Made by a program: the position numbers and the translations under genes
Notes under the pieces: generated by a model
What the model saw: the letters and a program-made list of their open reading frames with translations, nothing else
Told to the model about the DNA's origin: nothing
Database searches by the model: none
Assembly (NCBI RefSeq): GCF_036588685.1
Contig: NC_086377.1
Span: 14,942,001-15,006,000, forward strand
DNA from: Mytilus trossulus
Taxonomy: Eukaryota
Direction of reading: 5' to 3'
Length of the DNA stretch: 64,000 nt
Shown here: positions 27,748 through 55,264 of the stretch, piece after piece
How positions within the stretch are numbered: position 1 is the first letter of the stretch
Layout: each line of letters begins with the position of its first letter

Positions 27748-28128
27748 CTAATCTTCGTCCAAGTCAAAACTGTTCCAAATTTTCTTGTCGCTTCCTTTTA
27801 TCCTTTTTATCTTGGCGTCTATTGTAATGATGAGTCCTTGGTTTTTTAACATTTGAATTGTTGCTTTACATCTTGCATGCATTGCATACGCCAGAGCTGT
27901 TCTTCCTTTGTTGTCTTTTGCATTTATTTTTGCTCCGGTTCCTAGAAGTTTAGAAATGATCTCAAGTTTCTCATGAACGTCCTGATCAAGTGCAACCAAT
28001 TTACATGCGAGCATAAGTGGTGAGCTTCCTCTGTTTGTACAAAAGTTAACGTCGTGTCCACCTTGTATTAAAATTTTAGCCAATTTATATTTTCCAGACT
28101 CCAATGCCCATAATAACTTGTTTTCCAT
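27748..28128 (-). CDS. Small intronless ankyrin-repeat protein, ANKRD34-like (paralog 2)
   Basis: 126-aa ORF with GSSPLMLAC and GRTALAYA ankyrin motifs. Highly similar to paralogs 1 and 3. Confidence 0.85.
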   Translation of the reverse strand: MENKLLWALESGKYKLAKILIQGGHDVNFCTNRGSSPLMLACKLVALDQDVHEKLEIISKLLGTGAKINAKDNKGRTALAYAMHARCKATIQMLKNQGLIITIDAKIKRIKGSDKKIWNSFDLDED

Positions 28129-28209
28129 TTTTGTTTGAATGTTATGAAAAGATAGATTGTTATACTGCAGTTTCTTTTCTAAGTATACGTTTACAGTTCT
28201 ATTGCAAGC

Positions 28210-28270
28210 CTTTAAAGTAATTGATAATGTTGTAATCGACTACGTCATATCGTCAAAGGTTGTAGATTGG
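28210..28270 (-). promoter_or_regulatory. Core promoter of paralog 2: CCAAT, two TGACG sites, TATA altered to TTTAAAG
   Basis: RC CCAAT 28266-28270, TGACG 28251-28255, TGACGTAG 28240-28247, TTTAAAG 28210-28216. Confidence 0.55.
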
Positions 28271-30459: not shown

Positions 30460-33400
30460 AATACCCTTCCCAACCACCACACACACACATACACATAAAA
30501 CATTAAACAAATGAACACATTCCTATTCTATCCACACAAGAAATACTAATATTAAAGAGTTGACATATGTCATGTAAAAAAATAGTTTGGTTTATAATAT
30601 TTATAATGAAAAAAACGTGTTCATGTTAGCTGGTCAACATCACGTACAATACTTCAATTTGGTAAGTTTAAATTGCTAACGAATAGTGTCACAGTAAACA
30701 TTAGAACGGAAAATGTCAGCGTATAAACAAAATTACAATGTGGAAGATGTGACGCATTGATCTCACAGAGAGGGTTCAAAGCAATGCTCTTTACAAAAAA
30801 TGAGTTGGTATTTGGATTTTGTTCTAACTTTTAAACCTAAGCAAAACATACCGAATGAGGTTTTTTTTACTATAGAGAAAAGATAAATCACTTTCTATAC
30901 TTTCTGATTTCGTGAGTTTCTCTGGTTAAACTTTACATGTAAATTGTTTTTCATATACAAATATGAATTGTCATTTCAAATGTTTATTGCGTTGTGTTGT
31001 TTATTACTACAAAATTGCATAGATTACCTTAGCTGTATTTTGCAAAACTTTTAGGAAATTGGCCCCTCAATGCTCTTCAATTTCGTACTTTATTTGGCCT
31101 TTTTAATTTTTTGGATTCGAGAGTCACTATTAAGTCTTTAGTAACGTCTGGCGTATATAAAAATTAGTCCTGATATCTATGATGAGTTTATTTGCACAGT
31201 ATTTTGAGAAAAAAATGGTAATGTAGAAATAAGAAAAAATATATTGGCAATGAGATTACTATCAACGAAGTTCAGAACGTTACCAAAATTGAAAACTAAC
31301 AATAAGTGTAATAATACTTATCAAAAAGAACAAGCAAAAAATTACTCAGAAAAATAAGTATACATGACAAACAAGAAAACAAATTCTACGCACACACACA
31401 GCAACAGATAATCTGGTTGGCCTTTATTGGGCTTTTTTAACTTTTTTGGATTCGAGCGTCACTGATTAGTCTTTTGTAGACGAAACGCACGTCTGGCGTA
31501 TTTACATTTAAATTTAGTCCTGGTATCTATAATGAGTTTAAGAAACAACGAGAACTCCACTATAAGCCGGAAGTGAAATCAAAAGCTCCGGCAGGGCAAG
31601 CATTTCCTGCAAAAAAACTGGCACCAATTATTTGGGGAGTCCGAATGTGGCCTGTTAAGGTGCAACCTGTCCGTACATATCCAACCTATCCGTATTTCCA
31701 GTAGAAGTTTAATTGTTTTCCATTTCACAGTCGTCCAATCTGTCAGAACGTTTATGTGAATGATTATTGTAATTTGTATATATGGCAGAACAGGCAGAAA
31801 AACATATTTTATATTTGTATACTCTTTTAAAAGAAATTAACGATTTATCTTTACTTTTGAAACTGACTAACCCTATCAGAAGGTACAATTTAACAACAAA
31901 TAATTTATTTAATTTACAATCTACAATTCCCCTAAGGTTCGTAACTAATGAAGCATACACAATTTGTGATTTAGAAACATATAATGTGTGTTATTTTGAC
32001 TAAACAGGCGTCCAACATATTTTCTTATAAGCCTGGAATTTTTAATGAGATTATGTTTGCATATATGTTCAGCTTATGATTGATGTGTTTCCCTCGGTAT
32101 AAGTTAGAATCCCGGATTTATGACTCTTGATCAGCGGTATACTACTGTTACCTTTACATAGTGCAGTTCCAATGGTCATTATATTTTAATATTATTCAAA
32201 TCTAAAATAGAGGCTTTACTTTTGAAATCATGAAATATAACGTAGTTTATTGACCATCTACAGGGGTAACTACGTGTAAGTGTATTGCTGTTCCAGTGAC
32301 ATATAATCTTAAATGTTATCCAAATGGTATCTTCTTAACAAACAAAATATTTATACATAAATATAGAGCAGATAGAGGGCTCAATAGATTTTGATAGTAG
32401 TATATTATGTTTAAAAAAAAAAACACAGGATTTTTGTCTTTTATTCATGACACAAAACCGATTTTTTTACAGCAAAGCAACACACAATAAGTAAAGGGAC
32501 AGTTATTTAAGGGATGCATCATCGTGTTTAGTTATAAGAAGATGTGGTATGAGTGCAAATGAGACAACTCTCCATCCAAGTCACAATTTGTAAAAGAAAA
32601 ACCAACTGATGTCAAAGTTTTCATAACAGACCCTAAGTTCATACCAAACAGCAAGGAATTAATGTTGTCTTTCTTCAATGTAATCTTGTGAGATGTTTGC
32701 TTATCCTATTTGGCTTACAAGTACCTTTTATACAAATTCTATTTTTTCGACGTACATGCTAGGGTTTTATACCACCACTTCAGTAAAACTGGTTATGTGA
32801 AAAACTTGACGTTCCATTGACAGAAGAAAAAGAAAACTCATACATGTACATCAAAATTGAATTAAAACACATTTAAATATCTATCCCTTCCAAACATATA
32901 TACGTTGTATTTGTGCAAAATTTCATAAAAGGTAGTTTAAAAAATTGAGCACTTTTACAATACTCTTTGTTTCGCTTGATTTAAGGCATTTTAAACGCTA
33001 CATATTAATTCTTATTATAATCATACATTTATGATCATATTAAAAGAAGTTAATTTCAAATGTTCACATGAAAACCGGATTCGCATAGACTTTAACTTCC
33101 AGTGATTCCAATTTGTAATACTAAGTAACAGTCATTACATTGACATTTAAAAAGAGTGTTTAATATAAAAGCATAAATCAAAATACAAACACAATAGTTG
33201 TCCAAATACAAACATCGACAATAACTCTGACAGAATCGCTATAATACGTTAACAAATTTATAATGCTATGATTATCTTACTCATTTCTGTCCTATTTATT
33301 ACTTTTTTTGTGACATAATTGGAAATATAAATGATGATTTGACAAGGGGTATGAATGGTACAAAGTTATATCGGGAATAAATATAGCTATTCATTGTTCT

Positions 33401-34480
33401 TAAACTTAATTGAGGCCATAGTAATTACAGATGATCAAATCACGTAAATTAATGAGCAATAGAGCAATAAAAGAAACAAACCGTGAAAACAGAACATGAG
33501 AAAGTCGCAAACAAAAAGGAAAATGAGCGAGACAGAGTGTGTCTATCATAAAAGTACAAGTTTACTTGTATAAGCTGTAATAATTGGACCAACAACGGTC
33601 AACCTTTAAAGACTTGACTGTTAGAGTTTGTACTTATGTTGTCCTCAAAAGGAGACTGGTTTATCGAATCCATATTATGTTAATCTATTATTAAAGTAGC
33701 TGACTTATTGGCAATATCACATCTCGTTGTTTTGTGTTAGTTTTTTTTTAATATAGTACTCTGTTCAACTGTTTTAATCATTAAACATTGTCTGCAAACT
33801 TTCTATATTTGTACAAGCTGTGAAAAAAAGACGAATAACAAGCAACTTTGACATCCTTGATTTTTATGGTTTATACTTATATTGCCCTGACAAAAGGTCA
33901 ATATAAAAGATAAGTATATTTGTACATGCTGTATAACTGAACCAACAGCGGGCAACATCGACAGACTTGTCTTATACAGTTTTTAATTGAATTGTCCTGA
34001 AAGGGTGACGATTTATACTTATGTTGTCCTGACAAAAGGTGATTTGATTAAATACACATTATTTTACCTTTATAAAATATTAGTTTCTTTAGCAATAAAA
34101 CTTCTCCTCCTTATTTTCCTTCTTCTTTTTTTAAGGACAATGACGAATTATATTTTTTTCGAAAGTCGAATGATGTTCAAACCTCGGAACCTAATGTATT
34201 TACTGTATGTGGAAAAACCTTTCGAAATAAATGTTGGGTCCTTAATCCTCGATTCATCTTACTGTTTTGCATTGTATTACTTTCCATGAGAACGACACTG
34301 ATAAATACGTATTTTCAAATATACATCTGTGATTTGAAGAAGTTTAAATGTTCTTGTGTTTATTCAAACTGTATTCCTGTCAGGTAGTTTATTATTGAAG
34401 CGGTATTTTTAACATTGTCATAGAAGCAGAGAGTTGATAGCTCTTTGACCTGAAAAAAGGGACAAGAAACAGAAAACGGG
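30460..34480. repeat. Gene-less tandem duplication unit B1
   Basis: Ordered blocks (CA-rich start, TGTGACGCATT block, GGGGTAACTACGTG block, TGTACAAGCTGT sub-repeats) recur in 34480-39420 and 39650-49240. Confidence 0.8.
31420..31540 (+). mobile_element. Retrozyme-like fragment, hammerhead with core change (CTGATTA)
   Basis: GAGCGTCA-CTGATTA-GTCTTTTGTAGAC-GAAA-CGCACG-TC-TGGCGTA at ~31454-31500. A more decayed copy is at 31020-31170. Confidence 0.75.
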
Positions 34481-36995: not shown

Positions 36996-39900
36996 AATGA
37001 GCACCGCATAGTCAGCTATACAAGACCTCAATAAGACAATGTAAATCAATTCAAACGAGAAAACTAACGACCTCATTTATATAAAAAAAAAAGAACGATC
37101 GTAGTGTATTGACCATTTACAGGAGGAAACTACGTGTAATTGTTTTGCTGTTCCAGTGACATATAATCATAAATGTTATCCAAATGGTATATGATTAAAA
37201 CAAAAATATTTACCAAGCTTCAGACACAACTGCAATAAAGATTTTGAAACTGTTATTGATACAATAAACCTATAGTCTCCTGGAGTCATTTGATATTTTT
37301 CCAAAATGAAATATATATGTATATTATTTTGTTTATTTCTTATTTGTCTTTTAGTGTAAGCATCAAATAATAAGCGAAGGGGCAGTTAGTTAAGGGATGC
37401 ATCATCGTGTTTGGTTATACGAAGTATATAGTATTATATAATGTTTTAAAAAGAAAAACACATAATATTGTTTTTTTATTTATAACACAGAACCGATTCT
37501 TACACAGCAAAGCAACACACATTAAGCGAAGGGACAGTTATTTAAGGGAAGCATCATCGTGTTTAGTTATCAGAAGATGTGGAATGAGTGCAAATGGGAC
37601 AATTTTCCATTCAAGTCACAATTTGTAAAAGAAAAAACAGTTAATGTCAAAGTCTTCAACACAGAGCCTTAGCTCACACCAAACAGCAAGGCATTAATAT
37701 TTTCTTTCTTCAACGCATTCTTGTGATATGTTTGCTTATCGGGTTTGCATTACAAGTACCTTTTGTACAAATTATATTTTATCGACGTACATGCTAGGGT
37801 TTTATCCCGCCACTTCAATAAAACTGGTAATGTGAATAACTTGACGTTCAATTGAAAGAAGAAGAAAACTCATACATCAAAATTGAATTTAAAAACATTG
37901 AAATATCTACCCCTTCCAAACATATATTGTATTTGTGAAAAATTTAATAAAAGGTAGTTTACAAAATTGAGCACTTTTATAATATTCTTTGTTTCGCTTT
38001 ATTTAAGGCATTTTAAACGCTACATTTTAATTCTTTTTATATTCATACCTTGATTGTCATATTTAAAGAAGTTGATTTCAAATTTTCACATGAAAACCAG
38101 ATTTGCATGGACCTAAATCTTCAGTGATTCCAATTTTTTTTAATAAGTAACGGTCATTACATTGACATTTCAAAAGAGTGTTCAATATTAAAGCATAAAT
38201 CAAAATAAAAACACATAGATGTCCAAATACAAACATCGACAATCAAATTGACAGAATCGCTATAATACGTTCACAAATTTATAATGCTATGACAATCTTA
38301 CTCATTTTTGTCCTAACTATTATTTTCATTGTGACATAATTGGAAATATTAACGATGATTTAATAAGGGGTTTGAATGGTACAAAAGTATATCGGGAAGA
38401 AATATAGCTATTCATTGTTCTTAAACTAAATCAAGGCCATAGTGATTACAGATAATCAAATCACGTGAATTAATGAGAAATAGAACAATCAAAGAAAACA
38501 ACCCGTGAAACAGAAACTGAGAACGTGACAAACGAAAAGGAAAAGGAGCGAGACAGGGTGTGTCTAACATACAAATAGATAAGTTTACTTGTACAAGCTG
38601 TAATAACTGGACCAATAACGGACAACACTGACAGACTTGACAGTTACAGTTTGTATTTATGCTGTCCTCAAAAGAAGAATGGTTTATCGAATCTATATTA
38701 TTTTAATCTGTTATTAAAGTAGCTGACTCATTGGCAATACTATCACATCTCGTTGTTTTGTGTTAGTTTTTTTTAAAGTGTACTCTGTTCAACTGTTTTT
38801 AATCATTAAATATTGTCGGCAAACTTACTATATTTATACAAGCTGTGAAAAAAGACGAATAACAAGCAACTTTGACTTCCTTGATTTTTATGGTTTATAC
38901 TTATATTGCCCTGACAAAAGGTCAATAAAAAGGATAAGTATACTTGTACAAGCTGTATTAACTGGACCAACAGCCGGCAACAACAACAGACATGTCTTTT
39001 ACAGTTTTTAATTGTGTTGTCCTGACAGGGTGACGATTTATACGTATGTTGTCCTGACAAAAGGTGATTTGATTAAATCCACATTAGTTGACCTTTAGTA
39101 AATATTAGTTTCTTTAGCAATAAAACTGAACCTCCTTATTTTCTTTCTTTTTTTAGGACGATGACGAATTATATATATTTTTTTCGAAAGTCAAATGATG
39201 TTCAAACCTCGGAACCTATTATATTAACTGTATGTGGAAAAACCTTTCGAAATGATTGTTGGGTCCTTAAACCTTGATTCATCGCACTTTTTTGCATTTT
39301 ATTACTTTCCATTTGAACGACACTGGTAAAAACTTATTTTTAAATATACATCTGTGATTTGAAGAAGTTAAAATGTTCTTGTGTCTATTAAAACTGTATT
39401 CCGGTCATGTAGTCATAGTAGGGGTAACAAAAAGAAAACAGGAATGACACACACAGAAAAGGATTATAAGATAACAACTGCTATTTTAAACTAAATACCA
39501 TCCCCCACTACCACACACACATACACACCAACACACCAACACACACAAACATAAAACATTGAACAAACGTACACCTTCCTATTCTATCCTCACATCAGCA
39601 ATAAGAGGAAAACAACGAAACTGCAAAAACACTGAAATGCAACAACAAAAAAACGGGAATGACACACACAGAAAAGAATTATAAGAAAACAACTACCATT
39701 TCCAGAATTGGTAAAGGACAATTCAAGACACATGGTTGGTTAAAATTGTAATTAGAAATTTTCTAATTGGTGTTATTTGTAAATTGGATTAAATACTTGC
39801 TTTATAAACTAAATACCTTCCCCCATTACCAAACACGCACACATACACACACATAAAAACATTGAACAAACGTACACCTTCCTATTATATCCTCACAAGA

Positions 39901-42579: not shown

Positions 42580-43010
42580 CACTTGTATATTTGTCCATCT
42601 GATGAGTTGGGCCTTTTTCAACTGATTTTTATAGTAAGGTCTTATGATATACTGTTATACCACTGTCTCAGATAGTGAGAGGGTTGAGATCCCGTTAACA
42701 TGTTGAACTCCGCCACATTCTGTACGTATGTGACTGTCCCAAGTCAGGAGCCTGAAATTCAGTGGTTGCCACTTTTTTTTATATATTTGTTTTTCTTTTA
42801 TTTTTGGTACATAAATTCGGCCGTTAATTTTTTCCTTTGAAATGTTTTACATTGTGATCTCGGGCCTTCAATAGCTGACAATGCGGTATGTGCTTTGCTC
42901 ATCGTTTTGAAGGTCGTAGAGTGACTTATAGTTCCTTATTTCTTTGTTATTTTGGTCTCTTGTGGAAAGTCGTCTCATAGGCAATCATACCTCATCTTCC
43001 TTTTTTATAT
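42580..43010 (+). mobile_element. Interspersed repeat family A (SINE-like) containing a twister-like fold at 42659-42766
   Basis: ACCACTG..GAGAGGG-TTGAGATCCCG-TTAACATGTT-GAA-CTCC-GCC-ACAT..ATGT-G-ACTG-TCCCAAGT-CAGG-AGCCTG..CAGTGGT. A truncated paralog is at 36540-36655. Confidence 0.7.
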
Positions 43011-43358: not shown

Positions 43359-44164
43359 TATATGTTCCTGACCGTATGAGTATTTGGACCGTACGCGTAC
43401 GGTCTGAACCGTATGCGTACCTTTTCAAAATACTCATACGGTCGGACATTACTCGTACGGTCTGGTTAATATCATTAAGAAGGTGCCATTAAGAAGTTTA
43501 TAAGTTACCAATTCATGTAACAGATCAACATAACTTAACTCCCAAATTAATATGGAAAAGTTAAATTGTAATTGAAATTAAAACTGTATTTTTTATAACT
43601 CCATGTACTAGTATTTAAAAATTAACGATAATTAAATCTGTTAATAGCTGGATTTTAGCAAGTCGATCAGTAATACATTATTGAAATTGACGATATCGGA
43701 AGAAAACATAGTGGGAGGCCAATTGTTTATAATATTAGAAACTTTACAAAAACTGCAATGCAAAGGAACATGAATGAACTGCAATATTTAACATGTAAAT
43801 ATGAAAAAATTACATTACTTGTGGAAAAAAGTGTTACCTTGGGCAAGAGTTCCAAAAAAGGGTTCAGATATACAATTAAACAAAATTTCAATTGTTCATT
43901 CAACATGTTTAATTTTGTTCATATAATCCATCTAATAAAATGATAACAATTTTATAGAAATAAAAATAAAGATTGTGATAAATGTTTGTTTAAATACAAC
44001 CCATATAATCTGATAGCATGTATGTTCAGATCTTACATGTACTGCACCTTACGCGTATTCTCATACGGTCCGACCGTACGCGTATGGTCGGACCATATGA
44101 GTATACGTATACGGTCCGGACCGTACGCGTACGGTCCAAATACTCATAAGGTCTGGAACATATA
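43359..44164. mobile_element. ~800-bp MITE with long TIRs and palindromic sub-repeats, inserted in a TA context
   Basis: TATATGTTCCTGACCGTATGAGTATTTGGACCGTACGCGTACGGTC mirrored at the right end. Absent from the paralogous sites near 32728 and 37764. Confidence 0.85.
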
Positions 44165-45852
44165 CATATAATATTTTTTCCACGTAAATGCTAGGGTTTC
44201 CTATCGCCACTTCAGTACAACTGGTAATGTGAAAAAAAGACGTTCAATTAACATCATGTATGATGCATCAGAATTGAATTAAACACGTTTTAATATCTAT
44301 CCCGTCCGAACATACAATGTTATGTAGTGCAAATTTTCATCAAAGGTAGTAGAGAATATAGAGTACTTTTACAATTCTTTTTGTTTGGTGTAATTTAAAG
44401 CATTGTAAACGCTACATTTTTACTCTTTTTATATTCATACCTTGATGATTTTAAAAGAAGTTATTTCAAATGTTCACATGAAAACCAGATTTGCATGGAT
44501 TAAACCACCAGTAATTCCAACTTTTATAAATAAGTAACGGTAATTGCATTGACATTGACATTTCAAAACAGTGTCAAAGAAAGCTTAAATAACCATACAA
44601 ACACATATTATGCTATATATTATCTATTGAATATTTCTATTTTGTAAATCCAATAAGCTGTTACTTACGGAAATAAAGTATTATTATTATTGTCATATAA
44701 TTTGGAAATATTAACGATGATTTAATAAGGGGCTTGAATGGTGTAAAAATATATCGGGTAAAAAAAAAACTATTCATCTTTCTAAATAATATAGTTATTT
44801 ACCGATGATCAAATAACGTTAATTAATGAGGAAGAGAGCAAAGAAACAAACCTGAAACAGAAACTGAGAAAGTTGCAAACTAAAAGTAAACGCGCGGGAC
44901 AGGGTGTGTCTTACAAAACAAAAGATAAGAGTACCTGTACAAGCTGTAATAACTGGACCAATAACGGTCAACCTTGACAGACTTGACTGGAAGAGTTTGT
45001 ACTTATGTTGTCCTCAAAAGGGGACTGGTTTATCGATTCCATATTATGTGAAATCTATTATAAAATAACTGATTAATTGGCAGGAAATCATATCTCGTTG
45101 TTTTGTGTTAGTTCTTTTTAAGAAGTGTACTCTGTTCAACTGTTTTTAATCATTAAACTTTGTCGGCAAACCTTGTTTATTTATACCAGCTGTGAAAACA
45201 AGAGGAACAGCAAAACACTTTGACATCCTTAGTATTTACAGTTTATACTTATATTGTCCTGACAAGATTAAAAAAGATAAGTATACTGGTACAAGCTGTA
45301 ATGATTAGACCAACAACGAGCAACATTGACAGACTTAGATGTTACAGTTTGTTATTGTGTTATCCTGAAAAAAGGTTACTGGTATATAAAATCCATATTA
45401 TTTGTAATCTGGTATTTAAATAACTGACTCATTGGCAATAATACCACATCTAGTTGTTTTGGAATAGTTTCGTTTTTTAAACTGTACTGTTCAACTTTAA
45501 GTATAATAAATTGTCAACAAACCTTCTTTATTTGTGCAAGCTATGAAAAGAAGGAAAACATAAAAAGCAACTTTGCCATGTTTGCTGTTTACGGTTTGAA
45601 CTTAAATTATCCTCACAAAAGGTGACTGGTTTATGAAAACAAAGGTATTTGAACTTTTAGAAAATATTTGTATCTTAAGCAATGATACCACATCTCCTTA
45701 TTTTTCGTTAGTCTTTTCGAAACGATGACATTGATAAATTGTTGGGGAGTCTATTGATTTTCTAGCTCAGGAACATATTATATTAGTCTAATTTGGAACC
45801 ACCTTTCGGAATAAATGTTGGGTCCTTAAATCCTCGATTCATCGCACTTTAT

Positions 45853-46150
45853 TGGTCGATGCCACTGTTGGTGGACGTTTCGTCCTCGAGAGTATCACCA
45901 GCTCAGTAGTCAGCACTTCGGTGTTGACATGAATATCAATTATATGTTCATTTTTAGAAATTTGTCGAAACACTTAGGATTATCTTATCTCAGGAAAAGA
46001 TTACCTCAGCTGTATTTGGCACAATTGTCTGGAACTTTGGGTCTTCAATGCTCTTCAACTTTGTTTGCCTATATAACCATTTTTATCTGAGCCTCACTGA
46101 TGAGTCATATGAAGACGAAACCTGTGTCTGGCGTACTTAATTATAGTATT
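45853..46150 (+). mobile_element. Retrozyme-like unit with type I hammerhead (46091-46135), interrupted by a transposon; remainder at 49034-49056
   Basis: CTCA-CTGATGA-GTC ATATGAA GAC-GAAA-CCTGTG-TC-TGGCG. cUUCGg hairpin at 45909-45928. The tail GGTACCTTTGATAACTATT resumes after the insertion. Confidence 0.8.
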
Positions 46151-49033
46151 CACAGTGTAGATACTGTTCTGTACGCTATCCGGAAGTCGCGATTTTCGAA
46201 GCGAGGAGTTCAAACTGGCTAACAGAACGGTTTTGTTTTGGTGCTTTTTCTCATCATTTGTTTACTCCTATATCTATAAAGTGCTTTGCACATCTTAAAT
46301 GTGTGTATAACACCATAAATATGAGTAACTGTAACAAAAAACTTGCAGTAGAATATAAAATATACGCGTGCATCACACCAACTTCATAGAAAAAAGTGAA
46401 ATCGATTGACAATTTTGCTCTCGTAGTACAAAGCAAATAATCTTTTATCGCAAATATTTGCATCAGGTTACAGTAAAATATATACTGTTTCAATATTCCT
46501 ACCGTATTTATGTAGAATGTTCGTATTTCAAATAAAAAATATGCTTTCCTTGAGGATCCCAAAATAAATTACTGTACGATCAGTCTAAAACTGACTGTAT
46601 TCTAGTAGCGATTTCAGATTTTTTGTCTGTATGACCAGTCGTGATTTTGAAGGGAAAAACAACAAATGGAAGTTTTTAACGACCTTGACTGAAAAAAAAC
46701 GTCAATTTGAAGGTATATACGTGTCTATGTGACATTATGATTGTGTCCATGGAACTATAACGTGTAATTTTTTTCTTTAGACAATACAAATATATTTCTG
46801 ATGATTTTTGCAGATGGCAAAATAATTATATTTTTGTTCCGTTAGTCTTACTTAAAATCCAATGCCTAAAAGCAATACATGATTCGCTTGTGGACTTTGT
46901 ATTAGTGTGTCGTTGCAGTTATCTGTTTAACTATTACATTTTTAAAGACTATTTACACCGTCTACCGTTGACCAATTGGTGATTACATACATCAAGACTG
47001 TCTCTTTTAAAATGATAAAAAATAAATAGAGAAGGCTTTGTTTAAAAACTTTAGGTATTGAGGAAAGAATTAACAAAATTATACCCCGCCACTTCTATAG
47101 TCCATGTTTTGGAAAAAATAAACCACCAGAAAAATTATAGGTGCACAGGAGCATCATTTAATAACGAATATGAGAAAGTTTTATTTAATACTAGTATATG
47201 GTAAGTTTTTTGAAAGTTGCGTATAGTAAGCGGGTACCACCTAATAAGGTAGTGGAAAAGTCCATATCATGGAAATAAAAAAAACTGATGATTTTTCGAA
47301 AAAACAAAATAAGAAGTACACATTCAATTGAATTAAATAATAAAGAATCTGAAAAAGATTCATTAAGTTATGACAAGTGTCTGAAGGAAGTTGTGGATAT
47401 AAAATAGGTACGCCCAATATAAGGTTATAACACAGTCCGTATTTTAGATAGAAAAACATCAAAAATATTTTTACAAAAAATTCGAAATAGAAGGTCCGTA
47501 GTACATAAATAGATTAAAAATGGAGCTATTTTAGAAAAGTTTAACAATTGGTTTTGGAGGTCACGGTTGGAAATATCTGATGGGTGCCCCCATAAAATGC
47601 AATGTTCAAGTCCGTAACTTATATAAAGAAACCCCATAAAATATTTTTAATAAGATAAGAAATACATTCCTTTTTTTATAAACATATGGTTAATTTTCTC
47701 GTTTGAATTGTTTTACATTGTCATTTCGGGGCTTTTTATAGCTGACTTTGTGGTATTGGCTTTGCTTATTGTTGAAGGCCATACGGTGACCTATATTTGT
47801 TAATATCTGTGTCATTTTGATCTCTTGTGGCCGGTTGTCTCATTGGCAATCATACCGCATCTTCTTTTTTATATTATAATTTATGATACGGAATCCGAGA
47901 AAAAAATAATTAATAGTTATACCAGTGACGGATTCAAGAAAATTGGGATCCGGCGGTTTGAAACTCTTTTTTAACTTTCAATGCATTTGTATGGGAACAT
48001 ATATTTGGAATCCTCTTTTCTCCTGGATTGAACCCCTCTCCATTTAAAAATGTCTGGAAACTCCAATGTATATTAAGTTGTTTATGAGGAGATGCGCTTG
48101 TAAAACCGGCGAAACATGTTGTACCGGTCCAACGGACGAACGGAAAGACGAACTTCATTATCACTATAAACCATCGCTTTACAAAGTGGTGTACAATTTA
48201 GTGTGAAAGAGACAGATCTACATCCAAAACAAAGTAAAGGAACTGTGATCAATTATAGGCTACAGTACGGTCTCGAATGTTTGTAAATTCATGCATTTTT
48301 ATATAGTTACAATTAAATCTGTGTGTTTGTACAATTTTAAGTATAACGGAGGACATTTCTGAAACTTCTATAAACAAACAAACCTTCTTCGTATTTCAGC
48401 CGCATTCAAACATCCTTATACTTAATGTAGTAAGTCGAATACACCCTAACAAGCTAAAACATGTTTGAAAAGTTTACAGGATGTGAATTTATCAAAATAT
48501 ATTTGTGTTATTTAGAAAAATCCCTTCTTCAAATGTATCGTAAATAACTTTGAAATCACTACTAGAATACAGTGAAATAAAGACTGATCATACAGTTTCA
48601 AAATATACAAGCGAGACTGATCGTACAGTGAGAAATTCAAACAAGTGTAATTTTATTATTGTTGGCGTTAAAGATCTGGCTGAAACTTTTACCACCATTT
48701 AAAATATATACTTTATTTGGTAAATTAAGTCTGGATTTTACGTTAATTTGTACAGTAAGAGTGCAAAAAGACTGTTTTGAGGTTCACCGACTGATTTTCC
48801 TTAGTGATGCACTTGAAAATCTCTTAATTAAGGCAAAGATACGAATAATGAATGTGCTAAATTTAATAATAAACCATTTGTGAATATCGATGTCAGCTGA
48901 ATTAATCATTAAGCAATGTACAGATGAACATCTTACCGTTTAATATAGTAACAAATTTAAAATGTGATCCAAAAAGTTCTCGTTTCGAAAATCGCGACTT
49001 CCGGAAAGCGTACAGAATAGTATCTACACTGTG
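46151..49033. mobile_element. Non-autonomous DNA transposon, Transib/RAG-like superfamily (CACAGTG-initiated 55-bp TIRs, 5-bp TSD GTATT)
   Basis: TIRs 46151-46205 and 48979-49033 differ at 3 positions. GTATT occurs at 46146-46150 and 49034-49038. No transposase ORF is visible. Confidence 0.85.
47685..47872. mobile_element. SINE-like repeat (family A 3' part) nested in the transposon
   Basis: Matches 42820-43010 and the RC of 62765-62870. Confidence 0.75.
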
Positions 49034-49360
49034 GTATTGGTACCTTTGATAACTATTTTGCTTTTTATTTGTTTTTATTAAAATGATACTGATATCAACT
49101 TATTTTCAAATATACATATGTGGTTGCAAGAAGTTTGAATGTTTTTGAGCTTATATGTACTGTATTCCTGTTCAGTAGTCTTTTATTGTAGCGGTATTTT
49201 TAACATTGCAATATAAGCGTGTTGCTGATAGCTCTTTAACATGAACAAAAACCCACAAATATAAGAGCATATATAACAAGCAAGAAGACACATTATATAG
49301 CATGCACAGAAAGGAGTTTTTATGAAAATTTAATTATTATTAAATTTAATGACTAAATTT

Positions 49361-51839: not shown

Positions 51840-51910
51840 TGACGTTTATCCAATCGACAACCCTTAACGATATGACGTAGTTGATTATAACATTACAAAT
51901 GCTATAAATA
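51840..51910 (+). promoter_or_regulatory. Core promoter of paralog 3: TGACG, CCAAT, TGACGTAG, TATA
   Basis: TGACG 51840-51844, CCAAT 51850-51854, TGACGTAG 51873-51880, TATAAATA 51903-51910, lying 80-150 bp before the ATG. Confidence 0.65.
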
Positions 51911-51989
51911 TCGAAGTGGAATTGTTCACGTATACATAGAAAAGAATCATCAGTACAACGATCTATCTTTCATTCACCTTAAAACGAAA

Positions 51990-52370
51990 ATGGAAAGCAA
52001 GTTGTTATGGGCATTGGAGTCTAGAAAATTTAAATTGGCTAAAATTTTAATACAAGGTGGACACGACGTTAACTTCTGTACACACGCAGGAACCTCGCCA
52101 CTGATGATCGCATGTAAATTGGTTTCACGCGACCAGAACATCCACGAGAAACTTGAGATAATTGCCAAACTTCTAGCATCCAGAGCAAATATAAATGCAA
52201 AAGACGACAAAGGAAGAACAGCTCTGGCGTATGCAATGCATGCAAGATGTAAAGCAACAATTCAAATGTTAAAAACCCAAGGACTCGTCATTACAATAGA
52301 CGCCAAGATAAAAAGGATAAAAGGAAGCGACAAAAAGATTTGGAACAGTTTTGACTTGGACGAAGAGTAG
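51990..52370 (+). CDS. Small intronless ankyrin-repeat protein, ANKRD34-like (paralog 3)
   Basis: 126-aa ORF with GTSPLMIAC and GRTALAYA ankyrin motifs, AAAATGG start context, and a downstream AATAAA at 52734. Confidence 0.85.
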   Translation: MESKLLWALESRKFKLAKILIQGGHDVNFCTHAGTSPLMIACKLVSRDQNIHEKLEIIAKLLASRANINAKDDKGRTALAYAMHARCKATIQMLKTQGLVITIDAKIKRIKGSDKKIWNSFDLDEE

Positions 52371-53320: not shown

Positions 53321-53364
53321 ACGCCAGACGCGCGTTTCGTCTACATAAGACTCATCAGTGACAT
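53321..53364 (-). ncRNA. Intact minimal type I hammerhead ribozyme
   Basis: RC AUGUCA-CUGAUGA-GUCU UAUGU AGAC-GAAA-CGCGCG-UC-UGGCGU: complete core, stems I and II, and palindromic stem III ACGCGCGU. Confidence 0.85.
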
Positions 53365-54237: not shown

Positions 54238-55235
54238 TAAAAGAGGGACGAAAGATACCAAAGGGACAGTCAAACTCATAAAATTTAAACAAACTGACAA
54301 GCCATGGCTAAAAATGAAAAAGACAAACAGACAAACAATAGCACACATGACACAACATAGAAAACCAAAGAATAAACAACATGAACCCCACCAAAAACTA
54401 GGGGTGATATCAGGTGCTTCGGAAGGGTAAGCAGATCCTGCTCCACATATGGCACCCGTCGTGTTGCTTATGTGATATCAAATCCGGTAAATAGTCTAAT
54501 GCGGTAGGTCACATTCATGAAAGGGAAGGGGATTGTAGTTACCACGTAAGGAACATATCCGATATCATTTGTGAAACAGTTATTCCATAACGGTCAACCA
54601 ACTCGTAATGGCGTCCATAAAATTTAAGAAGGGATGATTTCAACTTAACCATTTGAAACTCCTGGTTTGATAGCTTCCTTGTGAGCGGCAACCCTCTATC
54701 AAGAAAATCATGATAGGAAATGCGTGCACGGGAATATCATATCAATTGGGAGATATAAACCCCGTATGCAGGTGCTGCTGGAATGTTTCTACTTGAAAGT
54801 TCACAATTGGAAAGCTGAAATCATCTCTTTTGTCGTATAGTTTTGTTTTCAACAGACCCTCATTGTCAATTTCTAGATGTAAGTCAAGATATGAAGTCGA
54901 CTTAACTGTATCTGTAGTATCCTTTATTTCTAGTTCAATGGGATAGATGCGTTCTACATAGTCACCAAATTTTGAATTATTTTGTGAAAGACCATCATCT
55001 ATATAGCGGAAAGTAGAGTTAAAGGATATTTCTAACTTCTTATCTTTCTTCCTAAGAAGTTTCTGCATGAAGTCAGCCTCATAATAATAAAAAAATAAGT
55101 CGGCAAGTAGAGGTGCACGCTTTGTTCCCATTGGAATACCGACAGTCTGTTGAAAAACGCGTCCTCCGAACGTAACAAATATGTTGGCAATCAAAAAATC
55201 AAGCATCTTGATAATATCAGTTTCGAAAATTTTTT
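54238..55235 (-). mobile_element. Penelope-like retroelement 3' fragment (RT remnant 54742-55206 plus tail)
   Basis: FQQTVGIPMGTKRAPLLADLF, RYIDD, SYLDL and TKLYDKRDDF motifs, with a frameshift near the end of the ORF. Confidence 0.9.
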
Positions 55236-55264
55236 GTTTTTAATAAAATAAAATGTTTTTAATA

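What the first reader, a model, noticed from the sequence alone, without database searches (positions are those of the whole stretch)
46146..49038. 2.9-kb transposon whose TIRs begin with the exact V(D)J RSS heptamer CACAGTG, with a 5-bp TSD
Seen: both ends start CACAGTGTAGATACT(G/A)TTCTGTACGCT(A/T)TCCGGAAGTCGCGATTTTCGAA (55 bp, 3 mismatches). They are flanked by a perfect GTATT duplication, and the interrupted retrozyme rejoins cleanly. Established: CAC-initiated heptamer-like TIRs plus 5-bp TSDs are hallmarks of Transib and RAG-like (ProtoRAG) transposons, the ancestors of RAG1/2, and RAG-like transposons are known from some molluscs. No nonamer (ACAAAAACC) lies 12 or 23 bp from either heptamer, and the TIRs are symmetric, which is more Transib-like. 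Inference: this is a non-autonomous derivative, implying that a RAG/Transib-family transposase was active after the local tandem duplication, because units B1 and B2 lack the insertion.
Basis: partly seen in the sequence, partly recalled or inferred. Interest (0 to 1): 0.8.

Follow-up and report, generated by a model that had tools for sequence, protein, structure and literature searches.

The report
Non-coding Transib-like transposon in mussel
This is a real 2.9-kb non-coding cut-and-paste transposon, one of about 250 young copies in a mussel genome, whose ends (CACAGTG...) and 5-bp target duplications fit the Transib/RAG-like kind, but the enzyme that moves it was not found, so that label is still unproven.

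Summary
Window 46151-49033 is a 2,883-bp element. Its terminal inverted repeats (TIRs) run about 55-60 bp and start with CACAGTG. It is flanked by a perfect GTATT duplication and sits inside a hammerhead retrozyme-like repeat. The genome (1.3 Gb; earlier scan notes call it a Mytilus mussel) holds 504 matching ends, about 250 copies.

Of 21 complete copies, 19 have a perfect 5-bp target-site duplication (TSD) and 2 have one mismatch. This rules out the 2-4-bp alternatives. Copies are non-coding. The longer copies examined carry unrelated nested insertions, not a transposase. Three copies 99.0-99.7% identical sit at different sites, so the family moved recently. It occurs in runs under four organism labels.

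New here: insertion favours an AT-rich 5-mer bracketed C|NNNNN|G (C in 27 of 54 ends).

The Transib/RAG-like reading is only partly supported. CAC ends and 5-bp TSDs fit. There is no nonamer-like block, targets are AT-rich rather than GC-rich, and Pfam RAG1 and RAG2 scans of the genome found nothing, although those scans are unvalidated.

The scan had already flagged this family several times elsewhere. Verdict: an ordinary new member of a known kind, of moderate interest.

The parts
46146..46150 (.). Left copy of the 5-bp target-site duplication, GTATT
46151..49033 (+). The whole 2,883-bp non-coding, non-autonomous element
   Evidence: It is colinear with 20 other copies at 92-96% identity. 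There are no long ORFs, and three internal ORFs gave no Pfam hit.
46151..46210 (+). Left TIR. It starts with CACAGTG and has a CpG-rich inner block (about positions 25-55) containing the TCGCGA and TTCGAA palindromes.
   Evidence: The first 60 nt agree with the family majority at 99.7% of positions.
48974..49033 (-). Right TIR
49034..49038 (.). Right copy of the 5-bp target-site duplication, GTATT
46571..46624 (+). Left arm of a second, subterminal inverted repeat (54 nt, 81%)
   Evidence: The same block pair is seen in other copies.
48543..48596 (-). Right arm of the subterminal inverted repeat
47689..47874 (.). An embedded short interspersed repeat that is far more abundant than the element itself
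   Evidence: Contig depth there is about 100 times that of the neighbouring bins, with loose ends at 47689 and 47874/5. A second copy lies at window 42823-43010.
46091..46134 (+). Degenerate type I hammerhead of the host retrozyme-like unit (45855-46150 plus 49039-49058) that the element interrupts
   Evidence: Rfam RF00163, 21.7 bits, E 0.0079, below the gathering score. Paralogues are shown, and circular or tandem joints 49058>45854.

Best explanation
The element is a non-autonomous cut-and-paste DNA transposon. It encodes nothing. It is moved in trans by a DDE transposase that recognises the conserved terminal 55-60 bp, cuts exactly at the outer C of CACAGTG, and joins the two ends 5 bp apart on the target. 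The preferred target is an AT-rich pentamer bracketed by C and G (C|NNNNN|G). The most likely enzyme is a Transib-type, RAG1-fold transposase of the CACTA-Mirage-Chapaev-Transib clade that is too divergent for the Pfam RAG1 model. Shown here: the element's boundaries, the TSD length, the copy number, the lack of coding capacity, recent mobility and the target preference. Inferred: the identity of the transposase and the hairpin-type cleavage chemistry.
For: The flanks diverge immediately outside CACAGTG in 30 of 30 ends. The genome holds 252 forward and 252 reverse ends with at most 1 mismatch, against 0 for the control pattern. Perfect 5-bp TSDs occur in 19 of 21 copies, and the other two differ by one base. 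Copies L034, L044 and L046 are 99.0-99.7% identical but sit at different sites with different TSDs, which shows recent transposition. Three of the longer copies (7.4, 6.9 and 3.7 kb) contain unrelated nested insertions and no transposase. The base just outside the TSD is C in 27 of 54 independent ends (p = 1e-8), and TSD GC content is 23% against 32.5% locally. From the literature: Transib and RAGL have CAC ends and 5-bp TSDs (PMC1131882, PMC7204232). The clade shares CA..TG termini and 2-5-bp TSDs (PMC12730594). Some mosquito Transib-N families insert at c-NNNNN-g-like sites (PMC1131882). The third base of hAT ends is always G, whereas here it is C (PMC1131882).
Against: No autonomous copy or transposase was found. 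The Pfam RAG1 scan of the genome gave a best E-value of 7.3, and the RAG2 scan gave none. The tool itself warns that these blanks do not show absence. There is no A-rich nonamer-like block at 12 or 23 bp. Targets are AT-rich, whereas Transib and RAG favour GC-rich sites (PMC1131882). A survey found only one Transib DDE domain across the mollusc genomes it analysed (PMC10294476). hAT5 elements also make 5-bp TSDs (PMC12730594).
Confidence: 0.6

Rival explanations
1. The element is a deletion derivative of a two-gene RAG-like (RAG1L-RAG2L, ProtoRAG-type) transposon, mobilised by a RAG1L/RAG2L pair.
For: RAGL elements have 5-bp TSDs and CAC ends. They are known in bivalves, including the mytilids Modiolus and Bathymodiolus, and non-autonomous RAGL elements exist in a pearl oyster (PMC7204232).
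Against: The protostome RAGL TIR consensus is CACTWMCAAACKTYKBB (PMC7204232). The TIR here reads CACAGTGTAGATACTAT, so only CAC is shared. The two TIRs are symmetric for about 55 bp, with no 12/23-like asymmetry. Pfam RAG1 and RAG2 scans of this genome found nothing, although they are unvalidated.
Confidence: 0.08
2. The element is a non-autonomous member of the hAT5 group of hAT transposons, which also make 5-bp TSDs.
For: hAT5 with 5-bp TSDs is a described group (cited in PMC12730594). hAT is abundant in bivalves (PMC10294476). hAT elements insert in AT-rich DNA (PMC1131882), as this family does.
Against: The third base of hAT termini is reported as always G (PMC1131882), and here it is C in all copies. 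TIRs of 55-60 bp are long for hAT; this point rests on my own knowledge.
Confidence: 0.1
3. The element belongs to another or undescribed lineage, for example a CACTA/Chapaev-related branch that makes 5-bp TSDs, or a superfamily not yet defined.
For: CA..TG termini are shared by the whole clade (PMC12730594). Earlier scan notes report RAG1-fold transposases of the CACTA/Mirage/Chapaev kind and a chromodomain-linked RAG1-fold transposon in this same genome (unchecked). The AT-rich target and missing nonamer are atypical for classical Transib.
Against: Described CACTA, Mirage and Chapaev elements make 2-4-bp TSDs, and 5 bp is the Transib/RAGL value (PMC1131882, PMC12730594). No such partner was tied to these TIRs.
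Confidence: 0.2

Closest known systems
Non-autonomous Transib families (e.g. Transib-N1_AG and Transib-N2_AG of mosquito; PMC1131882)
   Same: CAC-initiated heptamer-like ends, strict 5-bp TSDs, no coding capacity, and a symmetric target context with bases bracketing the 5-mer (cCASTGg in mosquito, C|NNNNN|G here).
   Different: The element is 2.9 kb, long for a non-autonomous derivative. The TIRs are 55-60 bp, with a CpG-rich inner block instead of an A-rich nonamer at 23 bp. The target pentamers are AT-rich rather than GC-rich. No Transib transposase was identified in the host.
Protostome RAG-like (RAGL) transposons of oysters, mussels and a ribbon worm (PMC7204232)
   Same: A bivalve host, CAC ends and invariant 5-bp TSDs. 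Non-autonomous derivatives are known.
   Different: The TIR sequence beyond CAC does not fit the protostome consensus. No RAG1L or RAG2L genes were detected. The ends are symmetric.
V(D)J recombination signal sequence (RSS)
   Same: The first seven bases equal the consensus heptamer CACAGTG.
   Different: There is no nonamer and no 12/23 spacer logic. This is a mobile multicopy element, not a signal beside gene segments. Only CAC is functionally invariant, so the 7-of-7 match carries little weight.
hAT5 group of hAT transposons
   Same: 5-bp TSDs and AT-rich insertion sites.
   Different: The third terminal base is C rather than the G reported for hAT termini generally (hAT5 termini were not examined), and the TIRs are much longer.

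Membership tests
Transib superfamily | 5-bp target-site duplication | tested here: met
   19 of 21 copies have a perfect 5-bp TSD, and 2 have one mismatch.
Transib superfamily | Termini start with CAC (heptamer-like CACWRTG) | tested here: met
   CACAGTG stands at all ends examined, and the flanks diverge right outside it.
Transib superfamily | A 38-bp TIR with an A-rich nonamer-like block 23 bp (or 12 bp) after the heptamer | tested here: not met
   The sequence is CGGAAGTCG at 23 bp and TGTACGCTA at 12 bp. The criterion is from PMC1131882.
Transib superfamily | [quoted passage not shown] | tested here: not met
   TSD GC content is 23% against 32.5% locally, p = 4e-4. The criterion is from PMC1131882.
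Transib superfamily | An autonomous partner encoding a Transib/RAG1-core-like DDE transposase of about 700 aa | tested here: inconclusive
   No coding copy was found among 22 full-length copies read (20 sampled loci, L051 and the window's own). The Pfam RAG1 scan of the genome was blank but has no working control.
RAG-like (RAG1L-RAG2L) transposons | TIRs fit the protostome consensus CACTWMCAAACKTYKBB | tested here: not met
   Only CAC is shared (against PMC7204232).
RAG-like (RAG1L-RAG2L) transposons | A convergent RAG1L-RAG2L gene pair in the autonomous form | tested here: inconclusive
   Scans of the genome with PF12940 and PF03089 were negative but unvalidated.
hAT superfamily (hAT5 group) | The third base of the terminus is G (YARNG-type end) | tested here: not met
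   The third base is C in all copies. The criterion is from PMC1131882.
hAT superfamily (hAT5 group) | 5-bp TSD (8 bp in ordinary hAT) | tested here: met
   hAT5 is cited in PMC12730594.
CACTA/Mirage/Chapaev | 2-4-bp TSD | tested here: not met
   The TSD is always 5 bp.
MITE | Short (under about 800 bp), high-copy, non-coding, with TIRs and TSDs | tested here: not met
   The element is non-coding with TIRs and TSDs, but it is 2.6-3.2 kb long with about 250 copies. It is better called a long non-autonomous element.

The most novel reading that the evidence does not exclude
Mytilus mussels may harbour a recently active, previously undescribed branch of the Transib/RAG1-fold transposases. It would be too divergent for the Pfam RAG1 model, and it may be the chromodomain-linked RAG1-fold transposon noted elsewhere on this chromosome. 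It would use CACAGTG-initiated 55-bp ends without a nonamer and target AT-rich C|N5|G sites. That would give a live protostome system in which to study how RAG-type enzymes read their ends and choose their targets.
Probability: 0.3. Interest if true: 0.6.

Novelty: new member of a known kind. Interest (0 to 1): 0.4.

Why it matters
Transib DDE domains were reported as almost absent from molluscs: one element across the genomes surveyed (PMC10294476). RAG-like elements in bivalves are mostly fossils. A young family of about 250 copies with the Transib/RAG signature implies that a matching transposase worked in mussels very recently and may still do so. Finding that enzyme would add a protostome, possibly active, relative to the small set of systems used to study the origin of V(D)J recombination. 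On the practical side, the family is a source of insertion polymorphism in mussel genomes, and earlier notes report copies in or near genes. If the partner proves to be hAT5 or another family, the finding is an ordinary repeat annotation.

Tried and rejected
1. Longer copies as autonomous partners. L033 (7.4 kb), L051 (6.9 kb), L045 (3.7 kb) and the second copy in L041 all contain unrelated nested elements and no transposase.

2. Coding relics inside the element. Recurrent 90-148-aa open frames on the minus strand are low-complexity and gave no Pfam hit.

3. Pfam RAG1 and RAG2 scans of the genome were blank. The tool's controls also stayed silent, so these blanks do not show absence.

5. A protein word search with the open frame that runs in from the TIR, meant to catch contigs of a partner sharing the TIR, found only two short contig fragments.

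6. A metagenome scan for the TIR found one more ordinary copy.

7. Presence or absence at this locus. The joint 46145>49038 appears in all four runs, but with only 20-21 nt on its shorter side. It matches paralogous retrozyme copies (AATTATA-ATCC-TGGTAC), so it is not evidence of an empty allele.

I judged that to be a way around the cap.

Full report
**Observation**

Window 46151-49033 is bounded by inverted repeats at 46151-46210 and 48974-49033. They are 60 nt long and 92% complementary, with three mismatches in the first 55 nt. Both begin with CACAGTG. A 26-nt terminal pattern occurs only at these two places in the window, against none expected by chance. GTATT flanks both ends.

I removed the element and one GTATT to reconstruct the empty site. 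The result aligns without gaps across the junction to five paralogous repeats in the window that carry a hammerhead motif. The host unit has a degenerate type I hammerhead at 46091-46134 (21.7 bits, below Rfam's gathering score). An intact hammerhead lies at 53321-53364. The window contains no N.

**Local context**

They lack not only the element but also the roughly 310-bp retrozyme-like unit that hosts it. The order of events is therefore an old duplication, then the retrozyme insertion, then the transposon insertion. This says little about timing.

**Family**

- The window is G000:C5:14942001-15006000 in a 1.3-Gb genome. Earlier scan notes call it a Mytilus mussel.
- The terminal 26-mer, allowing one mismatch, occurs 252 times forward and 252 times in reverse. 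The control pattern occurs 0 times. That makes about 250 copies.
- In 30 of 30 ends the flanks diverge immediately outside CACAGTG.
- I fetched twenty complete copies. With the window copy, 19 of 21 have a perfect 5-bp TSD and two differ at one base.
- Most copies are 2.6-2.95 kb, with a subgroup of about 3.17 kb.
- Mean pairwise identity is 93.8%. The window copy is 92-96% identical to the others.
- L034, L044 and L046 are 99.0-99.7% identical, yet they lie at different sites with different TSDs. They record recent transposition.
- Contigs of four runs under four organism labels carry element sequence at 90-99% identity, and some begin exactly at 46151.
- A marine metagenome contig holds one more copy.

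**Coding capacity and the search for a partner**

- The copies have no long ORFs. Recurrent 90-148-aa open frames are low-complexity and gave no Pfam hit.
- The long copies I could read (7.4, 6.9 and 3.7 kb, and a broken second copy in L041) contain unrelated nested elements.
- Pfam RAG1 and RAG2 scans of the genome gave nothing; the best RAG1 E-value was 7.3. The tool's own controls stayed silent, so this is not evidence of absence.
Six further long TIR pairs seen could not be read.
Only 800 non-coding bases of it could be fetched.
- A protein word search with the open frame that runs in from the TIR found only two short fragments.

**Target choice (new here)**

Among 54 independent ends, the base just outside the TSD is C in 27 and G in only 2 (p = 1e-8 against 16% background). 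The TSD itself is 23% GC against 32.5% locally (p = 4e-4). The preferred site is therefore a symmetric C|NNNNN|G with an AT-rich centre.

**Presence or absence**

A joint 46145>49038 occurs in all four runs. Its shorter side is only 20-21 nt, and it matches the abundant paralogous retrozymes. The test is inconclusive. The same run data show that 47689-47874 inside the element is a separate short repeat roughly a hundred times more abundant than the element. It is also present at window 42823-43010.

**Comparison with known families**

- *Transib and RAGL.* Published work gives CAC ends and 5-bp TSDs as the signature of Transib and RAG-like transposons (PMC1131882, PMC7204232). The wider CACTA-Mirage-Chapaev-Transib clade is described with CA..TG ends and 2-5-bp TSDs (PMC12730594).
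- *hAT.* hAT termini always have G as their third base (PMC1131882), whereas this family has C. However, hAT5 elements also make 5-bp TSDs (PMC12730594).
- *Points against a textbook Transib.* No nonamer-like block stands at 12 or 23 bp. The targets are AT-rich. Transib DDE domains are near-absent in mollusc surveys (PMC10294476).
- *Points against RAGL.* The TIR shares only CAC with the protostome consensus (PMC7204232). The ends are symmetric, and no RAG2 signal was found.

**Verdict**

The element and its family-level features are real. The family is best read as a long non-autonomous element of the Transib-like branch, moved in trans by a transposase not yet identified (confidence 0.6). 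hAT5, RAGL and an undescribed lineage remain as rivals.

The scan had already flagged this family at several other places in the same genome. One follow-up reached the same conclusion, that the label is unproven.

Noticed in passing
window 47689-47874 and 42823-43010: A short interspersed repeat of about 186 bp, embedded in the element and present again 5 kb upstream. It has roughly 100 times the contig depth of the element in all four runs, so it is probably a very high-copy SINE- or MITE-like repeat of the genus.
   Followed up: partly
L038:3899-6496(-) and L044:1084-3279(-): Two of the 20 sampled copies lie within about 0.5-4 kb of intact Toll-like-receptor-type ORFs (LRR plus TIR domains; 866 and 732 aa). 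Earlier notes also mention copies in a TNF intron and in an immune-receptor gene. This may be chance in a genome rich in such genes.
   Followed up: no
window 45855-46150 plus 49039-49058; joints 49058>45854: The host of the element is a hammerhead-bearing unit of about 310-320 bp. Contigs in three of the four runs join its end back to its start with 8-10 extra letters, as expected for tandem or circular retrozyme copies. Its hammerhead at 46091-46134 scores below Rfam's threshold.
   Followed up: partly
window 32700-34460, 37760-39300, 44160-45860: An old tandem array with a period of about 5 kb and 72-77% identity between units. It includes ankyrin-repeat ORFs at 27751-28239(-) and 51891-52367(+).
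   Followed up: partly
L045:743-1435(+) and window 54745-55239(-): Open frames of other mobile elements. One is nested in a copy of the family, and the window one begins with a reverse-transcriptase-like motif. Neither had a significant Pfam hit.
   Followed up: no
L051:2299-6261: A 4-kb nested element with its own terminal inverted repeats of about 45 bp (TCTATGGAAG...), inserted in a copy of the family. Its family is unknown.
   Followed up: no
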